Below, in pieces: positions 23,301-52,085 of a DNA stretch of 64,000 bases. The position numbers and the translations under genes are program-made. How positions within the stretch are numbered: the first letter of the stretch is position 1; each line of letters begins with the position of its first letter. Source of the stretch: Macrostomum lignano (taxonomy: Eukaryota); NCBI GenBank assembly GCA_002269645.1, contig NIVC01002811.1, positions 1-64,000 on the forward strand. Reading direction: 5' to 3'. A model generated the notes under the pieces. The model was not told the DNA's origin and ran no database searches. It saw nothing but the letters and a program-made list of their open reading frames with translations.

Positions 23301-23959
23301 ATCAGCACTGCACTGAAAGCGGCAGTAACACAGAGAGAATTCACAGAGAGAACTCTATTACTGGAGTTCGTCTTCATTCGTAAACTGTAATTCAAAATAT
23401 TTGTAGTCACAAATTGCTTCGTTCCGTGTGCATTAGATATGCACAAGCGCACGATACCTCCAGCTTTGTGAACCCTTTACTTTCCTGAGTAACTTCCTGA
23501 GCCACCATTCAGCATCATTAATAATGCAAGTTGGTGATTTCAGTGCTGGGGTACTGATGACGGGCGTACCTTGCGCGGGCTGTTCTTCGTGTGCCGGCGT
23601 GTGGGGGTGCGTGGGGTGGCGGGGAGGCTGGCCTTTTATGTACGTGGCGCACACTTTTTCTGTTATCCTATGATTTTTGTTTCTCCTGTTTACTTAATTT
23701 TGTTTCTTTTATGCTTCAATACTATCGAAATATACTCGTACTTGATAGCGGGCTCGCTTCGCCTGCCCTTCGTCGTCCTCGCCATCCCCGCGCCTTCCGC
23801 CTTTGTCCTGTTGGCTAATGAAAAAAAACGGCGAACGGCAGTTGCTTCTGACTGAACCCAAATTTATTTTTCACCAAAAAGTAAATTGGCAGACTTTGTA
23901 ATGCCATTGAAATTGTTTGTTTATCAGATCCCGTCTTTGTCGGTTAGAGCTGTTGAGGC

Positions 23960-25934
23960 TCAGCAGTCGGGAATGTCGCAGTAGCCCCAGCTGCTAGCCG
24001 TGTAACACCAGGGTCCGGTGCCCGACGAGGCGGGGTTCCTGCAGTAATTCTGCGCGTCGTTCTTGTTCCGGTCCGGGAACTCGAAACCGTTGTAGTAGTT
24101 GGTCCTGGCGTCGTTGGTTTTCCACGGGATGCAGGCCTCGCCGTTCTTTGTTTGGCTCTTTGTTCCAGCGTAGGTAAGACCGTTGCCGACTTTGCACTCC
24201 CTCCCTGTGTGGTGCGATAGTGACATTTATGGAATGGCCTCATCCAAAGTTTGCTCATTGCTGAAGCCTCCCACATCTACCAACCCCACTAAGTCACAGA
24301 CCACAGCCAGTGATAGTGCACTGATAACATTTCTGCCGCATTGCTGCTGAAGCCGCCTCAAGCCCGGTTTGGCCAGGGTGGCACCAACTCACTGTCAATG
24401 GTTGTCAGCTTCTCGCACAAGTCGCTGGTCACGTTGATAGATTTGGCGCACACTTTGCCAACATTGACACCGCCGCACCAGCCGCAGGTGGCTTTGCAGT
24501 TCTGCTGGGCGAACAATAGGTAGGGCGAATCGGCGTCGCAGGCCCGGATGGTGGGGTAGTCCCTGTAGGCAGGGCAGGACGGGTTGAGGTCCTTGCACTC
24601 GCTGGTGCTGTCTGTGCTGGGCGGCGCGGAGCAGCGGTCACCGGCGCAGTTCATCTTGTCGCTGCACAACCCGTTGTCCAGGCACATCTGGCCGCTCTTG
24701 CACTGGGTGCACGGCTCGCCACTAACGTAGGGCTTCTTGCCCTCGATGTTGCCGCCGGGGCCGTAGTTGCAGACGAGTCGGCCGTGCGGCTTGCCGGAGC
24801 ACTGGTCGTAGGCGCAGCCGAGGCACTGCGTCTCCGCCCACACCAGCGCCGTGTAGTGGCCGCAGACGTGGGCCCGGCCGGCCTTGGCGGTGTCGCAATA
24901 GTTGTTTTCGAAGTCGTAGCCGTTGCACTCTTCAAGGAAGCCCTCCATAGCCCTGAAAAACGGTAACGTACAATCGTGTTGCAGAATCGCTTGCACCCAA
25001 GTGGCATACAGCTGCACGTCCAACAAGATCGTTTAATTACGAGCAAAGAGCGAAAACAATGTGAAAAAGGATAGATGGATAGAATTTTTTCTGGCAGAGT
25101 TGAGGTGACTCGAAAATTACCAGATGACCTGGGAACTTTTGAGCATTGTCATATATCAGGCCGACAGTGGACAGGAGTTCTCAGAGCCAACAAGAAGTGA
25201 TGACTGTTCCACCGATCTGATTTTGTTTGCTCCTCACGGACGAAAGTCTTACGACAATTTTCAAAACCAATTACCGTGCGGAAGGGAACCCTTTGGTTTC
25301 AATCTTTGCAAGTTCTTAGAAAACATGGTTGGATTTCAAAACTCACTCATCAATTGGCGACGATCGCAAGGTGTTCATGAGGCTCTGGCCTACATCCGGG
25401 AAGTTGGCCGTCTTCCGACCGGATCGCTTGTCGTGCGGCGGGCCGCTGCAGTTGCTGGCGTGCTCCTGGGCCTTGGCGACGAGTTCCTCGCACCAGCACT
25501 TGATAAAGTAGCGATGAGTAATGAGCAATGAACAATATAGAGGGGTGAGTTTCAGGCGGAGGGGTCCTAGGTGTCGGGGAACATCAAAGGACCCATCAAA
25601 AGAGCGTGTGGTGTCGTACGTAAACGGCTGGGTTTAAACTAGAGCTCACCAAGGCCTGCATGTTGGCAGCCTTTGGCTGCGACTTGTAGCCAGTATCTCC
25701 ACCCTTGGCCACCTGAGCTCGGATCCGGTTGTGCTGGCACATGATGTACAACTTGGCATTGTCCGACAGACCGATGGCGTGCTCCAGCGGGCCGTACAGC
25801 GAGAAAGCTGGCGTTATGATGGGGCGGAGGTCAAGGATGCTGGTTTGTTGCAGTTTAGCTTCACAGTTGGAGTGAAGAGTTCACTTACCAGACGGCAGCA
25901 GGGCCAGCAGAACGATGGGAGCAAAGAGTTTCAT
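23960..25934 (-). CDS. Secreted CAP (SCP/TAPS, CRISP-like) protein with C-terminal ShK and kringle domains
   Basis: Exons 25889-25934 (signal peptide MKLFAPIVLLALLPS), about 25650-25839 (HNRIRAQVA..QPKAANMQAL), 25347-25498 (WCEELVAKAQEHASNC..VGQSL), 24393-24952 (GHYTALVWA..LVCNYGPGGN, hinge, six-Cys ShK CKDLNPSC..CKATCGWC) and 23960-24204 (kringle ..NYCRNP..GPWCYT..WGYCDIPDC). Introns 2-4 are phase-matched; the first junction needs a 30-nt intron or a 1-nt frameshift. Confidence 0.9.
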
Positions 25935-26581: not shown

Positions 26582-26680
26582 AATTAAATCTATTTATCTC
26601 AGCACTCACAAATATTCGGCAATCACCGAGAGCTGAAAGATTTACGCTCGTACAAACAATCGCGAGCCACGAGAAGACTG

Positions 26681-26798
26681 ATGGTAAGCAGTGCTTACTA
26701 TGGCCCAACTCAACTTTCTGCCCACCAGAGTAAATTAAATTCTATGGCTAAATTGGTAGTATCCGTTCTTGCCGGATATGGTAAGCACTGCTTACCAT
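26681..26798. repeat. Pair of 21-bp palindromes ATGGTAAGCA(C/G)TGCTTACCAT; third copy at 29133-29152
   Basis: 26681-26701 (one mismatch) and 26778-26798 (perfect 10-bp arms around a 1-nt centre); 20 nt identical again at 29133. Confidence 0.85.
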
Positions 26799-27206
26799 GA
26801 GTATTCTAGGCTTTCTTGTTTTCTGACAATTATAGGCTTTGCATTCTACATTCTTAATTGTTTCGTCAGTAACGTTTCTTAGTGCTTTGGTTCAAAAACA
26901 CACATTTTGTTCGAAGAGGCTTCAATAAAGTTTGAAATCGAGTTTACTAATAACAGAGTTAAACAACAAAAACGAGAATGAAAAACCTGATAATATTCTG
27001 GCTGATCGAACTTACTGCGCATACAGAGCGTACGGCTCGTGCACTACAGAAACTATAACTAGTGAAACTAATATAAATTATCAAGAGTTGGGAACTAATA
27101 TGAGCTAAAGACAAGAGCCAAAAACAGTAACAGAAAGGATGAAAACTTTAGTTTTAGCGGAAAATGAGTCCATTCTGCCGATGCTCGTACTTTAACGCTG
27201 CGAATG

Positions 27207-28345
27207 TCAGCGTTGGAAGCAATCTAACAAACAAAGTCCCGGGCATCTTGGACATCGGCTGCAGAAATAAACTGTGCGCCGGGAACTGGCAGAACTGTAG
27301 CACATTCTGCACCTTTTCGTAGGTCTGGGCTGGGTAGGACGACCTGGGATTTTCTCCGGAAAATGCTGCTCAGGGACTGCAACTGTTTGCAGCATGGAAG
27401 CCGGTCGCTTCCTGCCATTTCCAGTTCGCTCTATCAAATCACGGATGCTGGCTTCGAGATATCTGATAAAAGTATTCTGGCCACCACACTTGCAGTACAG
27501 AACCCAAGCGTTGCGCACCATTTGAGGGCAGGTATGCAAACCCAGCTTGTGGAACCATTTCGTTGTCTTTCTGCCGGCATCATAGGGCTGCAGGGTGCCG
27601 TCCAGCGTGTCCACTCCACCCATGCAGCGATTGTAAGTTAGCACACTGCGGCTCTTCTGCACTGCCACATGCTGACCAGCTCGATTGATCTTGACTTTCT
27701 CTGCCTTTGACGCAACGTCCTTCGTGTCCAGCAAATACAAGGTCTTGACTCCACTCTGCTTTCTCTCGACAGCCTTCACAATCAGAACACGTCCCTTCCT
27801 CGCGAAAGCTACATTATTCGGAACCACTAAAGCCTGCCGAAGCTGAGCCGGAACTCCTCGGTCTGGCCTCACGGTGCCCGTCAAGAACGTTGAATGGTCG
27901 ATAAGGAACTGGGACAACCTGTATGATGTAAACCAGGTGTCGGTAAATATTCTGTACCCCTGGTCCAGAATGTCCTTGGCCAGCTCAGCTACGATTCGCT
28001 CACTGAGAGAAAGATGTTCCCAGTCGTGTGTGGAGCCAAACTTCCGATTTTCTTCTGGAGTTGAGTGCACAAGGAAACTGAAGAGATAAGCAGACTTCGA
28101 CTCATACAGACAGTACATTTTCATGTACTGACAATGACAAGTCGCCAAACATTCTTAACTTCAGCAGCATCGCCATCTGCAAACTCCTGTTCTTCCTCGC
28201 CGTCAGGCCCTTCTATGGTTGGAGGATTGCCATCCAGTGCTTCTTCGCCAACCTCCTCGCCAGGCTCCTCGTCTATTGTTAAGTAGGAGTCGAGGCTTGC
28301 TTCACTGTCAGAGGTCATGTAGTCGATCTCAGAGGCAGAAGCCAT
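27207..28345 (-). mobile_element. piggyBac-like (PGBD4-type) transposase, internally deleted
   Basis: Acidic N-terminus MASASEIDYMTSDSE.. (ATG 28345) joined directly to MKMYCL..GYRIFTDTWFTS..TGTVRPDRG..YNRCMGGVDTLD..RKTTKWFHKL and a C-terminal Cys-rich domain (CRMC..CSRC..LCLLDCF). The region holding the first catalytic Asp is missing. A TTAA lies about 11 bp past the stop. Confidence 0.92.
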
Positions 28346-28466
28346 GTACTTTAGGATATCAGTGAGTAAATACTGTGTAAAATTTAGCGAGAAAACAGGT
28401 AAAGTGGCTCGCTTGATGAAAAGTAGATAAATAAAGGTAAATATCAACATGAAGTATTATTTGAGT

Positions 28467-28510
28467 TGCCGATGCATTTCGTCCATTTGCATTAGGACAT
28501 CGTCAGGGTC
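28467..28510 (-). ncRNA. Minimal type I hammerhead ribozyme motif (inverted copy)
   Basis: Reverse complement of the 28791-28834 motif, in the left arm. Confidence 0.68.
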
Positions 28511-28790
28511 TTTTTATTGAGAAACAATTTGAACGAATATTCAGTATATATAGATAGTTGAGAGTAACAAGAGTAGTTGAATTGAGTTTTTAATTGATGG
28601 TTTAAAACTTGTACATAGTAATCAATTTTTGATACAGTATTGGTTGGGTAAAGTGCATATCAGTTTCAAGCCAGTCCGGTCATTGACACCAAGTTTTAAA
28701 CCATCAATTAAAAACTCAATTCAACTACTCTTGTTACTCTCAACTATCTATATATACTGAATATTCGTTCAAATTGTTTCTCAATAAAAA

Positions 28791-28834
28791 GACCCTGACG
28801 ATGTCCTAATGCAAATGGACGAAATGCATCGGCA
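28791..28834 (+). ncRNA. Minimal type I hammerhead ribozyme motif
   Basis: CUGACGA (28795-28801), U, stem II GUCC/UAAUGCAAAU/GGAC, GAAA (28821-28824), palindromic stem III A-UGCA-U, C17 at 28830. Only 2 bp of stem I are evident. Confidence 0.68.
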
Positions 28835-29383
28835 ACTCAAATAATACTTCATGTTGATATTTACCTTTATTTAGCGAGAAAAGGCTAACAAACAAGACGG
28901 TAAGAGTGTTGCTGTAAGAAAGCTAGTTTTACTACAAAGGGGACTTGCTGTCTGTGCACAGATTTCTATTGTGAGCAGCGCATACCAAGCAGGCAGCAAG
29001 TGAAACTGTTCTATTGGCTAAAGCAGTAGTGCTGTTCATTTCCTTTCCGTCTAGCGCGTCAGTTTGAGCCAAGCTGGATCAGTATGTCTAGCCGGCAGGA
29101 ATGGAAGTGACATGCTATGCCAGAAAATATCTATGGTAAGCACTGCTTACCAAGCAGTCGGGAACAGACAAATTATGGATTCTGGTTAGGCAGGAAGAGG
29201 TTTTAAAGTGTCAATAAAATCAGAAAATTACTCGGCTGGCTAAAAGTTTAAATTGGGCTGAATGACTTCAAAAAACCTGTTTCAATGGTCTGTATTTCAT
29301 GAAGCTGTAAATAGAGCCATAAATGCCATTCAATCAGGTCAAACCAATTATAATTAGCAAAGCTGGTCGGTACGCTCCGATGC

Positions 29384-32300
29384 TTATGATGCCAGGAGGT
29401 GTCCCACAGGCCCAGCCTCCTCCACAGACTGATGGCTGGCGCAGGCGCGGCACCGCAACTGCGGACAGCTGCGCAGGTCTGGCAGGCTGCGGGCCTGGCC
29501 AGCAACTCGCCACTGCCAGTTCTCGCCGTCTGGCGGCGGCGACGGCGATGCGGCGTCCGCAGCCAGCTGGCGTTGCGGCAGCGTAGCAGCTGCCAGGCCC
29601 AGCCGCTGTGTGCAGCAACGACGCAGTAACAGAGCCGACGGCGGACGCCTTCTCCGCCTGGCGACGCCGTTATCGCCGCCGCGATCCGCCGCCCCGGTCG
29701 ACCGGCCGCACCAGTTAAACCGGCGGACAATGCGCCAGGCGCGCAGGAAGTTGGACTTGCGCAGCAGGATGTACAGCCAGGGATCCAGGATCTGGTTGAT
29801 GCTTGCCAGGTGGACGGCGGAGAGGTCGCGTGCGCAGTCAAAGCGCGACTGCAGCAGCGAGTTGAGCACAAGGCGGATCTACGAAGAAATTCAAGGTTTC
29901 ATTTTCTTTAATTTAGCTAATTGAAACGGTGCGAAACTATCGCGAATTTAGTCGTAAAGAGCGAAGAAAGGGAGACATGTGGGAGACGGAGATGGGGAGA
30001 CAGGGAGACGGGTGGGAGAGGGAGAGATGGAGACAGGTGGGAGAGGGAGACATGGAGACAGGTGGGAGAGGGAGACATGGAGACAGGTGGGAGAAGGAGA
30101 GAAGGAGATAGATGGAAGAGGGAGACATGGAGACAGGTGGGAGAGGGAGAGAAGGAGATAGATGGAAGAGGGAGACATGGAGACAGGTGGGAGAGGGAGA
30201 CATGGAGACAGGTGGGAGAAGGAGAGAAGGAGATAGATGGAAGAGGGAGACATGGAGACAGGTGGGAGAGGGAGACATGGAGACAGGTGGGAGAAGGAGA
30301 GAAGGAGATAGATGGAAGAGGGAGACATGGAGACAGGTGGGAGAGGGAGACATGGAGACAGGTGGGAGAAGGAGAGAAGGAGATAGATGGAAGAGGGAAA
30401 CATGGAGACAGGTGGGAGAGGGAGACATGGAGACAGGTGGGAGAGGGAGACATGGAGACAGGTGGGAGAGGGAGACATGGAGACAGGTGGGAGAGGGAGA
30501 CATGGAGACAGGTGGGAGAAGGAGAGAAGGAGATAGATGGAAGAGGGAGACATGGAGACAGGTGGGAGAGGGAGACATGGAGACAGGTGGGAGAGGGAGA
30601 CATGGAGACAGGTGGGAGAAGGAGAGAAGGAGATAGATGGAAGAGGGAGACATGGAGACAGGTGGGAGAGGGAGACATGGAGACAGGTGGGAGAAGGAGA
30701 GAAGGAGATAGATGGAAGAGGGAGACATGGAGACAGGTGGGAGAGGGAGAGAAGGAGACAGATGGAAGAGGGAGACATGGAGACAGGTGGGAGAGGGAGA
30801 CATGGAGACAGGTGGGAGAGGGAGACATGGAGACAGGTGGGAGAGGGAGACATGGAGACAGGTGGGAGAGGGAGACATGGAGATAGATGGAAGAGGGAAA
30901 CATGGAGACAGGTGGGAGAGGGAGACATGGAGACAGGTGGGAGAGGGAGACATGGAGACAGGTGGGAGAGGGAGACATGGAGACAGGTGGGAGAGGGAGA
31001 CATGGAGACAGGTGGGAGAGGGAGACATGGAGACAGGTGGGAGAGGGAGACATGGAGACAGGTGGGAGAAGGAGAGAAGGAGATAGATGGAAGAGGGAGA
31101 CATGGAGACAGGTGGGAGAGGGAGACATGGAGACAGGTGGGAGAGGGAGACATGGAGACAGGTGGGAGAGGGAGACATGGAGACAGGTGGGAGAAGGAGA
31201 GAAGGAGATAGATGGAAGAGGGAGACATGGAGACAGGTGGGAGAGGGAGACATGGAGACAGGTGGGAGAGGGAGATAGATGGAAGAGGGAGACATGGAGA
31301 CAGGTGGGAGAGGGAGACATGGAGACAGATGGGAGAGGGAAACATGGAGACAGGTGGGAGAGGGAGAGAAGGAGATAGATGGAAGAGGGAGACATGGAGA
31401 CAGGTGGGAGAGGGAGACATGGAGACAGGTGGGAGAGGGAGACATGGAGACAGGTGGGAGAGGGAGACATGGAGACAGGTGGGAGAGGGAGATAGATGGA
31501 AGAGGGAGACATGGAGACAGGTGGGAGAGGGAGACATGGAGACAGGTGGGAGAGGGAAACATGGAGACAGGTGGGAGAGGGAGAGAAGGAGATAGATGGA
31601 AGAGGGAGACAGCTGTAAATTATTAGAAAGCTATAAGTAGTAATTGTTGATATCAGATATTTATCAGCCACATTAGGTTGTAAAAATGAATAAATTAGGC
31701 AAAATATATGATGAATATCATGAAATATGATGCATAATCGGCAGAATGAACGATAGCACTGCAAGTAAAGCAGAGTTGGGCGCGGTTAGCGTGCAATCAG
31801 GAATTCATTCAGTGCATTACTCATTTATTCAGTGATTTATCGCTGCAACACCTATATTACCTGAATCAGAGAATTACATATCACACTTTAAATATTTTAT
31901 ATTTCATACATTAATACTTGTATCTTCCGAGACAGCTACTTCCAGTAGCCAAGCAGAGTAAAAAACTCGCTTTTTAAAAGCACAGGAACTTATAGGAATT
32001 GGAGTACTTAATAAACTTTAATTTTCACTAGCAAAGAGCTTCTAAGGCTCATTTTAACCTGGTAGGTACAAACACCATCGGTCGTTTAAGTATAAAATAC
32101 CATAAAGACCCTTCGCTTACTATGAGTAATATTCCTGCGGTAGATATTTTTAGCTACCCAGAAGAACAAAGTACAATACAACGCAATAAATACTGTTGGC
32201 TCAAAATTTTCGAATCGAATTATACATGCTGACTTACTGTAAAATTCAAACGAATAATTAAAGATTTTGGCTGCGCTGAATGACGGGTTGAAAATTTTTC

Positions 32301-35300
32301 GTTAACCCTCGGTTGGGAAGTGAAGTGTGAAGTAAGTGGCTCATTAGATTGATACTCCGCTCTGCATGGAAGACCCATTGAATATGGAGAATAGCTAGGA
32401 AGGACATTAGGGAATGAATCTTATATTCTTTACGGTTTTGTAGCTCATATTTGTGCACTTTTGGGTTAAAGTAGTCTGAGAAAGCAGTAAATTTGAGATA
32501 GAAAAGGCTAGAACTAGGTGGGTGGGAGAATGAGAGGGAAAGAGGGAGACAGCTGTGAGACGAAGACAGGTGGGAGAGGGAGACAGGTGGGAGAGGGAGA
32601 CAGGTGGGAGAGGGAGACAGGTGGGAGAGGGAGACAGCTGTGAAAGGGAGACAGGTGGGAGAGGGAGACGGGTGGGAGAGGGAGACAGGTGGGAGAGGGA
32701 GACAGCTGTGAGAGGGAGACAGGTGGGAGAGGGAGACAGGTGGGAGAGGGAGACAGGTGGGAGAGGGAGACAGGTGGGAGAGGGAGACAGGTGGGAGAGG
32801 GAGACAGGTGGGAGAGGGAGACAGGTGGGAGAGGGAGACAGCTGTGAAAGGGAGACAGGTGGGAGAGGGAGACAGCTGTGAAAGGGAGACAGGTGGGAGA
32901 GGGAGACAGCTGTGAGAGGGAGACAGGTGGGAGAGGGAGACAGGTGGGAGAGGGAGACAGGTGGGAGAGGGAGACAGGTGGGAGAGGGAGACAGGTGGGA
33001 GAGGGAGACAGGTGGGAGAGGGAGACAGGTGGGAGAGGGAGACAGGTGGGAGAGGGAGACAGGTGGGAGAGGGAGACAGGTGGGAGAGGGAGACAGGTGT
33101 GAGAGGGAGACAGCTGTGAGAGGGAGACAGGTGAGAGAGGGAGACAGGTGGAAGAGGGACACAGCTGTGAGAGGGAGACAGCTGTGAGAGGGAGACAGCT
33201 GTGAGAGGGAGACAACTGTGAGAGGAAGAAGAAGACAGATAGGAGACAGGTGGGAGAGGAAGAAGAAGACAGATAGGAGACAGGTGGGAGAGGGAGACAG
33301 CTGTGAGAGGTAGACAGCTGTGAGAGGAAGACAGCTGTGAGAGGGAGACAGCTGTGAGAGGGAGACAGCTGTGAGAGGGAGACAGCTGTGAGAGGGAGAC
33401 AACTGTGAGAGGGAGACAGCTGTGAGAGGAAGAAGAAGACAGATAGGAGACAGGTGGGAGAGGGAGACAGCTGTGAGAGGTAGACAGCTGTGAGAGGAAG
33501 ACAGCTGTGAGAGGGAGACAGCTGTGAGAGGGAGACAGCTGTGAGAGGGAGACAGCTGTGAGAGGGAGACAACTGTGAGAGGGAGACAACTGTGAGAGGG
33601 AGACAACTGTGAGAGGGAGACAACTGTGAGAGGGAGACAGCTGTGAGAGGGAGACAGCTGTGAGAGGGAGACAACTGTGAGAGGTAGACAGCTGTGAGAG
33701 GAAGAAGAAGACAGATAGGAGACAGGTGGGAGAGGGAGACAGCTGTGAGAGGTAGACAGCTGTGAGAGGAAGACAGCTGTGAGAGGAAGAAGAAGACAGA
33801 TAGGAGACAGGTGCGAAAGAAGCTGTGACAGATGATGAAGACGGCATGAGAATGCTTCGAAGGTCGATTCAAGGACAAACCCAGTTGAGCTGCAGAATTG
33901 GTTGAAGCGGGCGGCAGCGCAGCATCCCCTCAGCATTTGAATCTGGTGTTTGCATTGCAAAGCCAATAAACTGTGCTCAGACCGTCTGGCGGTGCGCTGC
34001 AGAAAGAAATTTACAATTTGTCAACTTTGCCCCGAACGAGCTTGAGAGCAGGGAAAAGCAGCAACTGGAACAGAATTGGAGCAGAAGCCGCATTTTCGGG
34101 CCGCCAGCTGTAAATCAGAAGCAAAAATATTTTTTAACCCGGGTTTATTGCTTTGAAAGGCTCTTGCTACTGTTTGCTCTTCCATCCTGTGTTCGGCAAA
34201 TAAGAAGAGTTTGAAATCCTGTACCGGCTAAAGTGCGTTCTTTGATGCGAAACTGCTTGATAGTTTTGCCAAGAAACAGGACCAGGACCACATCAACTGG
34301 GAAACTTTTGCTCTGGGAGCATCTCGGAGGGATTCCAGGGAGAATCTCGGAGGGATTCCAGGGAGAATCTCGGAGGGATTCCAGGGAAAATCTTGAAGAG
34401 ATTCCAGGGAGAATCTCGTCGGGAATCCAGGGAGAATCTCGGAGGGATTCCAGTGAGAATCTCGGAGGGATTCCAGGGAGAATCTTGAAGGGATTCCAGG
34501 GAGAATCTCGGAGGGAATTTCAAGGAGAAGCTCTGGGGGGAATTCCATCAAGAATATCGGAGGGAATTTCAGGGAGAATTTCGGAAGTAATCTCTGGGGG
34601 AATTCCATCGAGAATATCGAAGGGAATTTCAGGGAAAGTCCAGGGAGAATATCAGAGACAATCTTAAAGGGAATCGCGGAAAATCTCAACGAATTGGTAT
34701 TTCAGCGAAATCTCAATCAATTTTCTCAGATTTCAAGGAGATTTCAGGGAATTTTGAGAGGAAAACCTAGAGGAGTATCTTTGGGAATATTGGGATCAAA
34801 GAGAGTGTTTAACATACACAATGCAACCTATGGACGCAGATCAGAGCCCTCACCATCAGCGGAGACCAGCAGAGGGCGAAGGATGCCGTGATGGCCACGA
34901 GGATGACCAGCAGCTGCACCTCCATGGCCCGCATGTACTTCGGCCGCGCCGCCCCGCGAAACGACAGCCTATCGTTGCCCCTGGCCATCGCCTTGCGGAC
35001 CCGCCGGACGGACAGCAGCCGCCAGATGACCCACAGGTTGCTGGCCACGATGAGCACAATGACGGCCACGTTCCACAGGCCCAGGCCCGCGGCGAAGGCC
35101 CGGTCGGCCGGACGTCCGGAACGCGAGTCGACGAAGCACCAGGTGGCCGGATACTGCAGCCGGTAGGAGCCCAGCCCGGCCAGGGGCAGGCAGGCCGTCA
35201 GCAGGGCCGCGCAGAGCAGGCCTAGCAACCACCTGGTCACGTGACACCTGCGCCTATTAGCCAGGCACAATAGCCGTTCAATCGACATGCAAAGTACTAG

Positions 35301-35693
35301 AAGGGGCTCGCCTAGAGACACGGTTGTCATGACAACCGCGTGAGCCTGGCAGGCCAGATCGCCGCCAGTCCAGACGAGGCGCAGCCGACGGGAGCTGGAG
35401 TTGTAGCTGCCCTGAGCGTACACGGCCAGCGGTGCACTTGAGGTGAGCAGCTGGGCCAGCAGGTCGGCGGCAATCAGGGCGGTGAGCAGTGAGTAGAACA
35501 GGCTGGTTCGGCCCGATTTCGCCGGCCGGCGACGCCGCAGCAGCACCAGCAGGGCGAGCAGGTTGCCGGCGGCGCCAACGAGGAAGAGGCTGAGGGTCGG
35601 CCAGATGTTCGCGCCGCTCTGGCTCGGCAGCTCGCAGACTGACAGCGAGGCGTTGCCGGCGTCCAACTGGCCGCCGCAGCAGGTGTCGGCCAT
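29384..35693 (-). CDS. Prostanoid (prostaglandin EP-type) receptor-like class A GPCR, two coding exons
   Basis: Exon 1 34854-35693: GNLLAL (TM1), DLLAQL (TM2), MSIERLL (TM3), GLGSYRLQYPATWCF (ECL2 signature), EVQLLVIL..CWSPLM. Phase-0 intron in TM6, as in prostanoid receptors. Exon 2 29384-29878: DLSAVHLASINQILDPWLYILLRK (DPWxY motif). Confidence 0.93.
29970..31612 (+). repeat. Polypurine 25-bp composite minisatellite (GGAGACAGGTGGGAGAGGGAGACAT)n in the GPCR intron
   Basis: Main unit interspersed with GGAGAGAAGGAGATAGATGGAAGA variants; source of all long ORFs at 29.9-31.8 kb. Confidence 0.98.
32519..33830 (+). repeat. Polypurine 17-bp minisatellite (GGGAGACAGGTGGGAGA grading to GGGAGACAGCTGTGAGA) in the GPCR intron
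   Basis: Core shared with the 25-bp array; source of the ORFs at 32.2-34.0 kb. Confidence 0.97.
34313..34790 (+). repeat. Degenerate ~23-bp repeat (GGGAGAATCTCGGAGGGATTCCA) in the GPCR intron
   Basis: Well conserved at 34313-34520, decaying toward 34790. Confidence 0.9.
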
Positions 35694-37236: not shown

Positions 37237-38193
37237 ATGCCTGAGCCGGATACAGTGGAAGAACTTGTCATGCCACAGCAGCCAGACGAGCAGCCAGACC
37301 AGCAACAGCAACAAACCGAAGCTGCGTCAGATGAGGAAACACCAGTTGAAGAACCGTTGGCAGATCCAGCAGGAGAGCCACCAGTTCAAGAGTTTCAGTT
37401 GCACTCGGCCGGCAGCGCCAGCATCACTCAGCAGCCGCTGCCGCTGCCGCTGCAGCCTCTACCGCCACCGCAGGAGGGCCGGAACTGGCACTTCACTGTG
37501 GCGTTCGCCGGTCCGAGCCGGGTCGGCAAGACCAAACTGATCTGCCGCTTCACCCACAGTCAGTTCAGCGACGGTTACACAGAGACTCTGTCAGCCGCTC
37601 CGCGATCCAAAGCCGTAGCCATCGGTCGGCATCACGTGACCTTCCAGTGCTGGGACACGCCAGGCCGGGCCACCCTGGAAACCGGCCTGGACAGGCAGCT
37701 GCGCTTCCTGCACGCGTTGTTCATCGTCTTTGACGCGTCGCGCGACTGCACCCACGAGCTGGGCAGATGGTGCGCACTGGCCGAGACCTGCGGCCCGCCG
37801 CGCCCGATGCTGGTGCTGGTGGGCAACAAGACCGACCTCGGGCAGCACACCGCCACCCTGTCCGCCGCAAGGCAGCTGGCCGCCTCAGCTGCGCCAATCT
37901 TCTGCCTCAGCGTCTTGGCCGACGATGAGAACGTCGAGGTCGACGCCATGATGCTGGAGGTGGCCAAGGAGCTCACGGAGAGGCACAGCCGGCCGCTCGG
38001 AGGTCCGCGGCCGGGCCCAGCTGGCGAGCTGCCGGCCGGCCCGAGTCCCGACTCGTCCAGCGGCTGCGGAGACGGCGACGTCGAAGACAGCGGAGTCGGC
38101 AAGGCGAAGGGCGACGACGGGCGAAAGTCCGGGGTCGGTGCGAAGGTCAAAGAGGCGCTGACGGGCTGGCTGAACCGTTGCCAATGCTGCTGA
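37237..38193 (+). CDS. Intronless divergent Rab-like small GTPase with an acidic/Gln/Pro-rich N-terminal extension
   Basis: 318-aa ORF with G1 GPSRVGKT, G3 WDTPGR, G4 GNKTD and C-terminal CQCC prenylation motif. Confidence 0.88.
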   Translation: MPEPDTVEELVMPQQPDEQPDQQQQQTEAASDEETPVEEPLADPAGEPPVQEFQLHSAGSASITQQPLPLPLQPLPPPQEGRNWHFTVAFAGPSRVGKTKLICRFTHSQFSDGYTETLSAAPRSKAVAIGRHHVTFQCWDTPGRATLETGLDRQLRFLHALFIVFDASRDCTHELGRWCALAETCGPPRPMLVLVGNKTDLGQHTATLSAARQLAASAAPIFCLSVLADDENVEVDAMMLEVAKELTERHSRPLGGPRPGPAGELPAGPSPDSSSGCGDGDVEDSGVGKAKGDDGRKSGVGAKVKEALTGWLNRCQCC

Positions 38194-49550: not shown

Positions 49551-52085
49551 TCACTGGCCCTCGCTGGCGCCGCTGCCGCTCCCACCACCGCCGCCACCGC
49601 CGTTTCCGACGCAGGAGCTGATAGTGAAAAACGACACGCGGCGCTTCTTGCGCAACGGACTGTCGACATTGTCGGAAGTGCCGGCGGCCGATGTCGAGGC
49701 AACTGTCGATGGTGCAGCGGCGGCAGCTACACTTGTCGTCATTGGCGCCGCTGTTGTCGGCGTTCCAGGCGCCGAATTGGCGCCAGCCGACGCTGCATCC
49801 AGGCTCGTCGCCAGCGTCACGAACGGCACCCGACGCTTCTGACCCCGCGGTGTCAGCGGGTCGCCAGGTGAGGCTGCGGGCGCAGCAGCGGAAGAGGCGG
49901 CGACGGCAGCAGCTGGCGGGGTGGCCGGCGGCGCCTGAGGCGGCTTTGTCGACGACTGCGGCGTTGGAGGCGGCGGCGGCGGAGGCGCCAGTGGAGTCTG
50001 CGGAGCGTCCAGATTCTCCTTCTCGGGCTCGGCAAACGGCTGGCCGAGTTCGCCTTCGCCGAAGCGCACAATGGAACAGTAGCCGTCTGTGCTAGCCAGC
50101 ACCAGCTGGCTGCCGTCTGCCGACCAGGCGGCATCGTTCAGTGCCTGGTAGTGCAGGTTGCGCAGCGCCCCGATGGGGAACGGATGCTGGGTGTCGCACA
50201 GGAGCACCCCGGATTCCAGCACCACGGCGAACACCTGCCCGTTGGGTTGGGATGAAGCTCCCGCTTGGAGTTGAATCTTGACGACGAGATGCTTAGATCT
50301 CACCAACGATAGCTAGCGAATTCTCGAAGCTCATACTCAACTATCTAAATCCTTAAATCTCACCCTCACTAACTAAATCCTTAAATCTCACACTCACTAA
50401 CTAAATCCTTAAATCTCACACTCACTAACTAAATCCTTAAATCTCTCATTCACTAACTAAATCCTTAAATCTCACCATCACTAACCAAATCCTTAAATCT
50501 CACCATCACTAACCAAATCCTTAAATCTCACCATCACTAACTAAATCCTTAAATCTCACTCTCACTAACTAAATGCTTCACTATCTAAATCCTTCCCTAA
50601 CGAAATCCTTCACTAACTAAATCCTTCACTAACTAAATCCTCATATCTCGCCCTCACCAAAGTACTTAAATCCCAGCATTAGCAAAGGATTTGTGAAGTG
50701 TCAGCTGATCAATCATAGCTACCTCAGCCCTCATAAAAGCGCACCAAAGCCTTACCCATCTATACGGCAGCTTAACCAGATCCTGCTGAATTCTGCGCCT
50801 GCCCAGCTCCAGTTGCGGATGATAAGCCAGCGCAAATCGGCGCTGACAGAAACGCACAGCAACGGGCGCGGACTGGCCGGTAACCAGGGACGCGAACGGC
50901 TTGTCCAGCTTGGCCCTGCCGAACAGGTGAACGCAATAATTATCATTCCAATGCAGGCCGGCCGGGGCTGCCAGGACTTTTCCGTCTGGCGAGAATGACA
51001 GCCTGCGAAAGAATGATTTCCAGCTGTCGTCTGCGAATAGGCGATAATTGTTGGATTGCTGCTGCTGCTGCTGCTGCTGCTGCTCAGTGTTCCTGACGCA
51101 CTTGGCTATCACAACGGCCCTGGCGCTGCAACCGTAGACTCGCACGGTCCGATCCGAGCTCTGGGTGGCCACCAATCGTCCGAGGGGATCGCAGGCGATG
51201 CCCTGGACAAAGTGGGCGTGCTCGCGTACAATTGTGCGCTGCTGCTCTTTGGCCAGGTTCCAGCGGACAATGGACCGGTCAACTGAGCCAGACACGAGGC
51301 CCTGCGGGGGGTGTTAAGGTTCACTCATTTATCACTGATAATCTATTCGCTTGACTGGTAGCCAATGCGTGAGATTCTATTGAATAGAGGGTTGGGGCTT
51401 CTAAATCTCACGGATCAAATTTGAGGATGAGTACTCAGAATCTAATAGATCAAATATGAGGATGAGTACTCAAAATCTCACATATCAAATATGAGGATGA
51501 GTACTCAAAATCTAACAGATCAAATATGAGGATGAGTACTCGAAATCCCATGGATCAAATTTGAGGATGAGTACTCAAAATCTCATGGATCAAATTTGAG
51601 GATGAGTACTCAAAATCTCATGGATCAATGAGTTAAGCCAAACTCACCATGGAGTCTGGCATCCATCCCAGATCGTACACATCCTCCAAGTGAGCTCGCA
51701 GCGCCCGCCAAACAGTCCAAGTCTCCTTGCACACGAGGTCATCCTCGTCCGCTGCCGAGGGAGCGGGGAGCTCAGGCTGGACCTCCTGCCGGGCCCACAA
51801 CAGCACGGTGGCATCGTCAGAGCCGCTGGCCAACAGGCGCTGGTCTGGCGAGAATCGGACCACATTGACCGGCTTTTCGTGTCGACGCAGCGACGATAAA
51901 AACTCTACGACGGCGTCGCCCGCGGCGGGCAGCTTCCACAGCTGGACTCGATTGTCCCTACCGCCTGTTGCTAGGCGGTACCAGCCGTTGGCGCCGTTAG
52001 AATCCGTGTTCAATGTCTGCTGAATGTCGCACGAATAAATTGGCGTAGTCTCGTGCCAGGAGATCTCGGGAGTGATCAGCCTCAT
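49551..52085 (-). CDS. CHAF1B: Chromatin assembly factor 1 subunit B (p60/Cac2), WD40 protein
   Basis: Exons 51648-52085 (MRLITPEISWH..RHEKPVNVVRFSP..HLEDVYDL), 50756-51301 (LVSGSVD..FVQG..SFFRRLSFSPDG..LPYR) and 49551-50234 (FAV..NLHY..LNDAAWSADG..STDGYCS), with phase-0 junctions. C-terminal KRRVPFVTL / KRRVSFFTI resemble B-domain motifs. Confidence 0.95.
50340..50660 (+). repeat. ~28-bp repeat (CACTAACTAAATCCTTAAATCTCACCCT) in CHAF1B intron 2
   Basis: About 9 units, decaying toward the right. Confidence 0.92.
51405..51630 (+). repeat. ~35-bp repeat (ATTTGAGGATGAGTACTCAAAATCTCATGGATCAA) in CHAF1B intron 1
   Basis: About 6 units. Confidence 0.92.

What the first reader, a model, noticed from the sequence alone, without database searches (positions are those of the whole stretch)
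28396..28868. Fold-back retroelement carrying two opposed hammerhead ribozymes, inserted just upstream of a piggyBac transposase
Seen: a 473-bp insert bounded by a 14-bp direct repeat. Inside are two 184-bp inverted arms, each with CUGACGA-U-[GUCC..GGAC]-GAAA-UGCA-UC. Established: Penelope-like elements and metazoan retrozymes carry minimal type I hammerheads with a tiny palindromic stem III, and PLEs can form inverted pLTR structures; a long TSD fits retrotransposition better than a TA-type MITE. Inference: this is a non-autonomous PLE/retrozyme in inverted form. It sits about 50 bp upstream of the piggyBac ATG (28345, minus strand). A read-through transcript could be cleaved by the minus-strand ribozyme or fold into a 184-bp dsRNA hairpin that feeds small-RNA silencing, i.e. 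a ribozyme-bearing hairpin cassette acting on a neighbouring transposon.
Basis: partly seen in the sequence, partly recalled or inferred. Interest (0 to 1): 0.85.

Follow-up and report, generated by a model that had tools for sequence, protein, structure and literature searches.

The report
Inverted Penelope-element end pair with hammerheads
The 473-bp insert is real, but it is an ordinary by-product of a Penelope-like retrotransposon: two head-to-head copies of the element's ribozyme-bearing end, landed inside a broken piggyBac transposon of the flatworm Macrostomum lignano, with nothing showing that it regulates its neighbour.

Summary
A 14-bp direct repeat (28382-95, 28869-82) brackets a 473-bp insert with two perfect 184-nt inverted arms, and each arm carries CUGACGA-U-GUCC..GGAC-GAAA-UGCA-UC.

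The motif has every published hallmark of Penelope-like-element (PLE) minimal type I hammerheads. A strict descriptor never matched 1000 shuffles of the window. The same hammerhead subtype occurs in unrelated animal contigs with covarying stems, once 130 nt downstream of a PLE-type GIY-YIG endonuclease ORF.

This is the known PLE "tail". Direct repeat, tail, pLTR, spacer, inverted pLTR, direct repeat is the standard PLE insertion architecture, and a second example is present in a metagenome contig. It fits reverse transcription primed from both nicked target strands.

The insert is not a retrozyme, because it has no tandem same-strand hammerheads. The proposed regulatory role is unsupported. 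Any read-through RNA folds into a -315 kcal/mol hairpin that buries the weak hammerhead.

The host piggyBac-like element (26664-29202) is internally deleted and absent from two paralogous M. lignano loci.

Verdict: a new member of a known kind, of low interest. Not testable here: genome copy number, the parent PLE, an empty site for this insert, and cleavage activity.

The parts
28382..28395 (.). Left copy of the target-site duplication (ATTTAGCGAGAAAA)
   Evidence: Exact 14-nt direct repeat with 28869-28882.
28396..28427 (-). 32-nt one-sided 'tail': the extra 3'-terminal sequence of the minus-sense copy, absent from the right-hand copy
   Evidence: Lies between the left repeat and the left arm and has no inverted partner. 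It matches the 30-40-bp PLE tail found at only one end. L006 has a 44-nt counterpart.
28428..28611 (-). Left arm: minus-sense copy of the PLE terminal (pLTR) region, with its 3' end pointing left
   Evidence: 184 nt, 100% complementary to 28690-28873. The hammerhead sense strand is the - strand.
28471..28506 (-). Minimal type I hammerhead motif, minus strand (C3 = 28506, C17 = 28471)
   Evidence: Descriptor hit. Mirror image of 28795-28830.
28612..28689 (.). 78-nt unique spacer. Most likely the extra 5' length of one of the two truncated copies; which copy cannot be told.
   Evidence: Lies between the arms. No other copy in the window. The 48-codon open frame on the + strand has no homologue.
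28690..28868 (+). Right arm: plus-sense copy of the PLE terminal (pLTR) region, with its 3' end pointing right. Complementarity continues to 28873, into the duplication.
   Evidence: The 5-nt ATTTA overlap with the direct repeat was read.
28795..28830 (+). Minimal type I hammerhead motif. Core CUGACGA (28795-28801), unpaired U28802, helix II 28803-06/28817-20, GAAA 28821-24, palindromic AUGCAU 28824-29, C17 28830. Helix I is only C28794-G28831 and C28793-G28832.
   Evidence: Features as published for PLE hammerheads. The architecture is supported by covariation in 16 related motifs. No Rfam match.
28869..28882 (.). Right copy of the target-site duplication
28749..28756 (+). TATATATA, 39 nt upstream of the hammerhead (mirror at 28545-28552 on the - strand). 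Possible pLTR TATA box; inference only.
   Evidence: Read. By analogy with the TATATATA in the Adineta vaga pLTR. L013 has TATATAT about 25 nt upstream of its hammerhead.
26664..29202 (-). Host element: piggyBac-like transposon remnant that contains the insert
   Evidence: Absent from both paralogous M. lignano loci L001 and L002, which carry AAACAATTGC-TTAA-AGTG at the site. Subterminal palindromic repeats at both ends.
27207..28345 (-). Defective piggyBac transposase. A 74-aa N-terminal ORF (28345-28121) and a 313-aa ORF (28148-27207) lie in different frames.
   Evidence: Pfam DDE_Tnp_1_7 matches only profile positions 156-349. Frame break seen. Relatives align only from about residue 80-100 onward.

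Best explanation
The insert is a non-functional ('dead on arrival') integration product of a Penelope-like retroelement. It consists of two 5'-truncated copies of the element's terminal pLTR region joined head to head. Each copy carries the pLTR's minimal type I hammerhead on its outward-reading strand.

Proposed mechanism. The PLE GIY-YIG endonuclease nicked both target strands 9-14 bp apart. Both 3' ends primed reverse transcription of PLE RNA. The right-hand cDNA started at the inner of two adjacent start sites, 38 nt past the ribozyme cut site, at a 5-nt ATTTA match with the target. The left-hand cDNA started at the outer site, 32 nt further on, which gives the one-sided tail. Both cDNAs stopped after about 180-260 nt and were joined. 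Filling the staggered nicks made the direct repeat.

The hammerheads are passengers of the pLTR. At this locus they most likely do nothing, and the element is a young, neutral insertion in the 5' leader of an already defective piggyBac-like transposon.

Shown: the anatomy, the PLE-type hammerhead, its link to a GIY-YIG ORF in a relative, a recurrent identical architecture, and the hairpin energetics. Inferred: dual-strand priming, the two start sites, and neutrality.
For: - Anatomy: direct repeat, 32-nt tail, 184-nt arm, 78-nt spacer, 184-nt arm, direct repeat. Both hammerheads read outward and the tail lies downstream of one of them.
- Published PLE insertion features match: 5' truncation, an adjacent inverted copy, and a 30-40-bp tail at only one end. 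A 9-bp duplication with a 31-bp tail on one of the inverted 181-218-bp pLTRs in Adineta vaga.
- A purified PLE protein cleaves and extends both strands and starts reverse transcription at two adjacent internal sites that define the tail.
[quoted passage not shown] Opposite-strand hammerhead pairs 100-700 bp apart were already reported.
- The strict descriptor gave 0 hits in 1000 shuffles.
- A pattern that left helix II free retrieved 9 loci (7 distinct sequences) carrying hammerhead-like motifs on animal-like contigs; most have a paired helix II of different sequence.
- Across 16 motifs, 82.7% of cells are paired against 60% in shuffles. The covariation score is 0.624 against 0.202 (0 of 500 shuffles as high), and slid controls reach at most 38%.
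- L013 has a GIY-YIG ORF with a Cys/His cluster that ends 130 nt upstream of such a hammerhead on the same strand.
- L006 746-1159 is an independent twin: an 11-bp duplication, a 44-nt one-sided tail, arms of about 198 nt at 95% complementarity, and outward-reading hammerheads.
Against: - No RT or GIY-YIG ORF was found among the 16 ORFs scanned in the window.
- There is no other copy of the arm in the window or in L001/L002. The parent element and the family copy number are therefore unknown.
- No empty site for this particular insertion could be obtained. L001 and L002 lack the whole host transposon.
- No Rfam hammerhead model matches, even on 76 nt at E <= 10.
- Helix I has only 2 bp here, against 3-6 bp in most relatives. 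Helix II has 4 bp, whereas the minimal PLE motifs of Schistosoma and D. virilis have 6-8.
- The 14-bp repeat is longer than the 8-10 bp reported in A. vaga, though it may really be 9 bp.
- The PAc study reports start sites that are not homologous to the target. Here there is a 5-nt match.
Confidence: 0.85

Rival explanations
1. It is a dedicated non-autonomous hairpin-shaped element. It would be transcribed and retrotransposed as a unit by PLE enzymes, rather than arising as a one-off truncated by-product.
For: Non-autonomous PLE derivatives and pLTR-only mobilised units exist. Retrozymes are proposed to derive from pLTRs. The compact size and the intact duplication are compatible with this.
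Against: A hairpin RNA copied as a unit would not give a tail on one side only. The unit lacks tandem same-strand hammerheads, so nothing can be excised or circularised. Only one copy was seen in the 106 kb of M. lignano DNA examined. The identical architecture in an unrelated sequence (L006) points to a mechanism and not to a family.
Confidence: 0.08
2. It is a TIR-type DNA transposon (MITE, Foldback or Mutator-like, with long terminal inverted repeats) that merely contains a hammerhead-like string.
For: The arms are long and perfectly inverted, the element is short, and it is flanked by a direct repeat.
Against: The left arm does not abut the duplication, because 32 unique nt intervene. The bases directly flanking the two arms do not repeat. 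A 9-14-bp duplication with a junction overlap is atypical for such elements. The hammerhead carries PLE-specific features well beyond chance, in the orientation expected of pLTRs.
Confidence: 0.03
3. The perfect palindrome is an assembly artefact or a fold-back repair product, and not a single integration event.
For: The arms are 100% identical. PLE tandem and inverted structures are known to confuse assemblies.
Against: A clean direct repeat brackets the whole unit. The asymmetry matches a biological signature, the tail. A diverged natural counterpart exists in L006/L015 on two separate contigs.
Confidence: 0.03
4. The cassette has been co-opted. The left pLTR would promote transcription into the piggyBac ORF, or the hairpin would feed small-RNA silencing, or the ribozyme would cut read-through transcripts.
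For: TATATATA lies 39 nt upstream of each outward-facing hammerhead. pLTRs carry promoters in other PLEs. The hairpin is very stable. A 109-aa ORF runs in frame from the left arm into the transposase N-terminus.
Against: There are no expression or small-RNA data. The hairpin out-competes the hammerhead fold. Minimal hammerheads are barely active as monomers, and a PLE hammerhead left no cleaved ends in RNA-seq. The target gene is already broken. The locus is absent from paralogous copies, so no conservation can be shown.
Confidence: 0.04

Closest known systems
PLE insertions with inverted pLTRs and a one-sided 'tail' (e.g. Pen2a_Av of Adineta vaga; Penelope of Drosophila virilis; Naiad elements)
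   Same: A target-site duplication, a head-to-head inverted pLTR of about 180-220 bp, a 30-40-bp tail at the 3' end of only one pLTR, 5' truncation, and a hammerhead inside the pLTR.
   Different: Nothing lies between the pLTRs here: no RT/EN ORF and no direct pLTR. It is the bare inverted pair, with a 78-nt spacer. The duplication is 9-14 bp against 8-10 bp.
Minimal type I hammerheads of PLEs (Cervera and de la Pena 2014)
   Same: The CUGANGA/GAAA/UH core, an unpaired nucleotide after A9, G10.1-C11.1, and a short palindromic helix III suited to dimer formation. Pairs on opposite strands 100-700 bp apart were noted in Schistosoma.
   Different: Helix II has 4 bp with a 10-nt loop, whereas the Schistosoma and D. 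virilis minimal motifs have 6-8 bp. Helix I has only 2 bp, as in D. virilis. No Rfam model recognises the motif.
Metazoan non-LTR retrozymes
   Same: A short, AT-rich, non-coding unit with a type I hammerhead, probably mobilised by PLE enzymes.
   Different: Retrozymes are tandem direct repeats with canonical hammerheads and give circular RNAs. Here the copies are inverted, there is one minimal hammerhead per strand, and no excisable unit exists.
Poseidon element of Anolis carolinensis (PAc) in vitro integration
   Same: It explains the anatomy: both target strands are cleaved and extended, two adjacent internal RT start sites define the tail, and the target is AT-rich.
   Different: In PAc the start sites lie about 85-125 nt past the ribozyme cut site and show no homology to the target. 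Here they lie 38 and 70 nt past it, with a 5-nt match at one junction.
L1 twin-priming inversions (from my own knowledge; not checked here)
   Same: A second priming event on the other target strand produces an inverted, truncated retrotransposon copy within one duplication.
   Different: In L1 the two segments come from different parts of the element and are not a palindrome. Here both start at the same end of the template.

Membership tests
Penelope-like element (PLE) insertion | Flanking target-site duplication | tested here: met
   Exact 14-nt repeat, of which 5 nt are ambiguous with the element's end, so 9-14 bp.
Penelope-like element (PLE) insertion | pLTR copies in inverted head-to-head arrangement | tested here: met
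   184-nt arms at 100% complementarity, with the hammerhead sense strands reading outward.
Penelope-like element (PLE) insertion | Optional 30-40-bp tail at the 3' end of only one copy | tested here: met
   The 32 unique nt at 28396-28427 lie downstream of the minus-strand hammerhead and are absent on the right.
Penelope-like element (PLE) insertion | Hammerhead motif inside the pLTR | tested here: met
   The same subtype lies 130 nt downstream of a GIY-YIG ORF in L013.
Penelope-like element (PLE) insertion | RT plus GIY-YIG ORF, or sequence identity of the arms to the end of an element that encodes them | not testable with these tools
   No such ORF was found among the 16 window ORFs scanned. 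No searchable M. lignano genome was available. The 48-aa frame has no homologue.
Hammerhead ribozyme, type I (Rfam models) | Match to a curated covariance model | tested here: not met
   No hammerhead hit at the gathering threshold, nor at E <= 10 on 651 nt or on 76 nt.
Hammerhead ribozyme, PLE minimal variant | Conserved core C3-A9, G12-A14, A15.1-U16.1 and H17 | tested here: met
   CUGACGA ... GAAA ... U-C, read and matched by the descriptor.
Hammerhead ribozyme, PLE minimal variant | Extra nucleotide between 9 and 10.1; G10.1-C11.1; palindromic helix III | tested here: met
   U28802; G28803-C28820; AUGCAU at 28824-28829.
Hammerhead ribozyme, PLE minimal variant | Helices I and II supported by covariation | tested here: inconclusive
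   The class shows strong covariation. However, the relatives come from other animals, not from copies of this family. This copy forms helix II (4 bp) but only 2 bp of helix I.
Hammerhead ribozyme, PLE minimal variant | Self-cleavage | not testable with these tools
   This needs in vitro transcription of monomer and tandem-dimer constructs.
Metazoan non-LTR retrozyme | Tandem direct repeats of 150-450 bp, each with a hammerhead on the same strand | tested here: not met
   There is one hammerhead per strand, in inverted orientation, and no direct repeat of the unit.
Metazoan non-LTR retrozyme | Canonical type I hammerhead with 6-bp helix I and loop 1-loop 2 contacts | tested here: not met
   Helix I has 2 bp and no loop 1 can be defined.
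TIR DNA transposon (MITE / Foldback / Mutator-like) | Terminal inverted repeats that abut the target-site duplication on both sides | tested here: not met
   32 unique nt separate the left arm from the repeat. The bases directly flanking the two arms do not match.

The most novel reading that the evidence does not exclude
The unit is not a dead by-product. One reading is that it belongs to a dedicated hairpin-shaped family that parasitises PLE enzymes. The other is that it has been co-opted: its outward-facing pLTR promoter and in-frame start codon would drive a chimeric transcript into the piggyBac ORF, and its 184-bp hairpin would generate small RNAs against PLEs.
Probability: 0.07. Interest if true: 0.5.

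Novelty: new member of a known kind. Interest (0 to 1): 0.18.

Why it matters
This is a very clean and very young natural example of the smallest product of PLE integration: two ends, one tail and one target-site duplication. It agrees with the in vitro finding that a PLE protein primes on both target strands from two adjacent start sites. It also shows that PLEs carrying hammerheads have been recently active in Macrostomum lignano, a flatworm model for which the literature searched holds no account of PLE hammerheads. Beyond that it is ordinary repeat annotation. It should not be read as a regulatory ribozyme cassette.

Tried and rejected
- Rfam at the gathering threshold over the window, and at E <= 10 on 651 nt and on 76 nt: no hammerhead family.
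- Exact family pattern in metagenome contigs: 0 hits.
- The same core pattern in viral contigs: 6 hits, none with a paired helix II, so chance matches.
- Five of the 14 hits in the second metagenome scan (L004, L005, L008, L009, L010) also lack helix II and were discarded.
- Homologue search with the 48-codon open frame of spacer plus arm: nothing.
- Exact-protein look-ups of the 74-aa and 109-aa ORFs, to find other copies or an empty site: not on record.
- The piggyBac ORF search returned relatives at 70% identity or less and no second copy of the family. L003 is too short and too diverged to help.
- Full-text search for the ribozyme strings: only unrelated primer matches.
- Two key papers (Lunse et al. 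2017; Pyatkov et al. 2004) are not held, and there are no supplements for Cervera 2014.
- tblastn of the L013 endonuclease against the window: nothing. blastn of the element against the metagenome and viral loci gave only a weak 40-nt match at 80% identity to L022, treated as chance.
- Snap-back self-priming was considered as the origin of the palindrome and rejected as the main model. It would copy the tail and the target flank into both arms and leave only a short loop.

Full report
**What is in the sequence**

The finding's description is accurate. ATTTAGCGAGAAAA occurs at 28382-28395 and again at 28869-28882. Between the two copies lie two arms, 28428-28611 and 28690-28873. They are 184 nt long, 100% complementary, and separated by 78 nt. 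The string CTGACGATGTCCTAATGCAAATGGACGAAATGCATC sits at 28795-28830 on the + strand, and its mirror at 28506-28471 on the - strand.

- The 32 nt at 28396-28427, between the left repeat and the left arm, have no partner on the right.
- The right arm's complementarity runs 5 nt (ATTTA) into the right repeat. The real target-site duplication is therefore somewhere between 9 and 14 bp.

No other copy of the element exists in the window.

**Is the hammerhead real?**

No Rfam hammerhead model matches: not at the gathering score over the window, not at E <= 10 on 651 nt, and not on 76 nt.

The literature explains why. PLE hammerheads are minimal variants that needed a relaxed descriptor to be found. 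Their hallmarks are listed below (Cervera and de la Pena 2014, PMC4209133).
- A conserved G10.1-C11.1 pair.
- A tiny palindromic helix III, suited to acting as a dimer.

All three are present here: U28802, G28803-C28820, and AUGCAU at 28824-28829. They come with a full CUGANGA / GAAA / U-C core.

A loose descriptor expects 0.245 hits per window by chance, so the bare core proves little. A descriptor that demands the published PLE features plus 2 bp of helix I gave 0 hits in 1000 dinucleotide shuffles of the window. It gave 0 in 20000 shuffles of the 257-nt unit. I wrote that descriptor after seeing the sequence.

**Independent relatives**

I scanned metagenome contigs with CCCTGANGA-N(14-24)-CGAAATGCATCGG, which leaves helix II free. 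The scan returned 14 loci.
- Five lack any helix II and are taken as chance matches.
- Nine (seven distinct sequences) lie on AT-rich contigs. One of these contigs carries a Frizzled gene, so it is animal DNA.
- All nine have the 1-nt bulge. Most have a paired helix II of a different sequence in each: GGUG/CACC, GACCGA/UCGGUC, GGCAUC/GAUGCC, GAGCC/GGCUC and GACAC/GUGUC.
- The same contigs hold further motifs whose helix III is ACAUGU, on both strands.

Across the 16 distinct motifs, 82.7% of cells pair, against 60% in shuffles. The covariation score is 0.624 against 0.202, reached by 0 of 500 shuffles. Sliding the partners by 1-3 columns drops pairing to 38% or less. Part of helix I, and the G10.1-C11.1 pair, were fixed by my search patterns. 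The other pairs were free.

In L013, an ORF with a GIY-YIG domain and a Cys/His cluster ends 130 nt upstream of such a hammerhead on the same strand. This ties the hammerhead subtype directly to a PLE endonuclease.

The window's copy fits helices II and III. It forms only 2 bp of helix I, against 3-6 bp in most relatives. D. virilis Penelope also has a 2-bp helix I.

**Architecture**

Both hammerheads read outward, away from the centre. The 32-nt extra segment lies downstream of the minus-strand hammerhead. This is the published structure of PLE insertions:
- heavy 5' truncation;
- an inverted 5'-truncated copy adjacent at the 5' end;
- a 30-40-bp "tail" often present at only one end (PMC8557442).

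In Adineta vaga, pLTRs of 181-218 bp flank elements in inverted orientation, with 8-10-bp duplications and a 31-bp tail at the 3' end of one pLTR (PMC3846280). Opposite-strand hammerhead pairs 100-700 bp apart were already noted in Schistosoma.

I also found an independent twin. L006 746-1159 (duplicated in L015) has the following features:
- an 11-bp duplication, ATATGAATTCA;
- a 44-nt tail on one side only;
- arms of about 198 nt at 95% complementarity;
- an 18-nt loop;
- outward-reading hammerheads.

L017 holds an older, 77%-complementary pair. So the "fold-back" form is a recurrent product of a mechanism. It is not a peculiarity of this locus.

**Mechanism**

A purified PLE protein (PAc, from Anolis) cleaves and extends both target strands. 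It starts reverse transcription at two adjacent internal sites, and the interval between them is the tail (PMC11167929).

Applied here, as inference:
1. Staggered nicks 9-14 bp apart opened the target.
2. The bottom-strand 3' end primed the right-hand copy at the inner start site, 38 nt past C17, at a 5-nt ATTTA match.
3. The top-strand 3' end primed the left-hand copy at the outer site, 70 nt past C17.
4. Both cDNAs aborted after about 180-260 nt and were joined. The 78-nt spacer is the extra length of one of them.
5. Gap filling made the direct repeat.

Snap-back self-priming fits worse. It would duplicate the tail and the target flank in inverted form.

The arms show 0 differences in 184 nt, so the event is young, unless gene conversion keeps them identical.

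**Context**

A Ras-family ORF in the window is 99% identical to Macrostomum lignano BOX15_Mlig032775g3. Two paralogous loci from assembly GCA_002269645.1 align to the window at 96-97% identity, but they lack 26664-29202 altogether. At that site they read AAACAATTGC-TTAA-AGTG.

That 2.5-kb segment is a piggyBac-like element with subterminal palindromic repeats. The PLE insert sits in its 5' leader, 50 nt upstream of the ATG at 28345.

The transposase is defective.
- Pfam DDE_Tnp_1_7 matches only profile positions 156-349.
- The 74-aa N-terminal ORF and the 313-aa ORF are in different frames.
- Relatives align only from about residue 80-100 onward.

No RT or GIY-YIG ORF was found among the 16 ORFs scanned.

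**Does it act on its neighbour?**

Nothing supports that.
- An RNA spanning the whole insert folds into the 184-bp duplex at -315 (+ strand) or -308 (- strand) kcal/mol. The hammerhead fold is worth -3.6 kcal/mol.
- In a transcript coming from upstream of the piggyBac gene, the antisense arm is made first. It would capture the ribozyme strand as that strand emerges.
- Minimal PLE hammerheads show no monomer activity and little dimer activity in vitro.
- Hammerhead mutants of PAc did not change insertion, and no RNA-seq reads ended at its cut site.

Two possibilities remain as inference. The hairpin could feed small-RNA pathways. The TATATATA box 39 nt upstream of each hammerhead (28749-56, mirrored at 28545-52) could promote outward transcription, as pLTR promoters do in other PLEs. 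Either would need expression data.

**Comparison and verdict**

It works like, and by four of five defining features is, a PLE insertion. The fifth feature, a link to an RT/GIY-YIG parent in the same genome, could not be tested.

It is not a retrozyme. Retrozymes are tandem direct repeats with canonical hammerheads.

It is not a TIR transposon. The left arm does not abut the duplication.

The kind is well described. This instance in M. lignano is not mentioned in the literature I could search. I rate it a new member of a known kind, of low interest.

**Dead ends**

The main ones are listed here; the rest are under tried and rejected.
- Exact family pattern in metagenomes: no hits.
- Viral contigs: only chance matches.
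- The 48-codon frame has no homologues.
- Exact-protein look-ups were empty.
- Searches for the ribozyme sequence strings in papers gave only unrelated hits.
- Two key papers are not held.

Noticed in passing
window 26664-29202 (flanks 26639-26663 and 29203-29206): The whole piggyBac-like element is absent from both paralogous M. lignano loci (L001, L002), which have a single TTAA at the site. In the window the right end abuts TTAA. The left end does not, and 8 extra bases (GCTCGTAC, 26646-26653) sit just outside. This suggests a truncated or rearranged left end.
   Followed up: partly
window 28121-28450 (- strand): A 109-aa ORF starts at an ATG 18 nt inside the left arm. It runs open through the 32-nt tail and the duplication, in frame into the piggyBac N-terminal ORF. 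In A. vaga the pLTR plus tail carries the first codons of the PLE ORF, so this ATG may be the PLE's own start codon. It could equally be chance.
   Followed up: partly
window 29965-31611, 32541-33790, 34315-34585: Three long G-rich minisatellite arrays, with periods of 25 (or 33), 17 and 23 nt and up to 73 copies, lie between the insert and the GPCR and Ras genes. They create long spurious ORFs, and their lengths differ between the window and L001/L002.
   Followed up: partly
L006 3106, 4259, 5466 (- strand); same in L015: Three same-strand minimal hammerheads are spaced about 1.15-1.2 kb apart on an unidentified animal contig. They could be tandem PLE-derived units. The same contig also holds the fold-back twin at 746-1159.
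   Followed up: no
L013 39-764: A 1-kb metagenome contig carries the C-terminal end of a PLE-type GIY-YIG endonuclease ORF. This is followed, 130 nt later, by a TATATAT stretch and a minimal hammerhead with the same helix III (AUGCAU) as the window's motif.
   Followed up: partly
window 28386-28391 and 28409-28415: The hexamer AGCGAG of the target-site duplication recurs in inverted form (GCTCGCT) inside the 32-nt tail. This is probably chance, at roughly 0.1 by a rough count of my own, but it might reflect target recognition.
   Followed up: no
window 23944-25046, 34809-35693, 37237-38193, 49551-51295: The neighbouring host genes are a CAP plus Kringle secreted protein, a rhodopsin-type GPCR, a Ras/Roc GTPase (99% identical to the M. 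lignano protein) and CAF1B/HIR1 WD40 exons. The window is 96-97% identical to two Mlig_3_7 loci, so it is a third paralogue or haplotype.
   Followed up: partly
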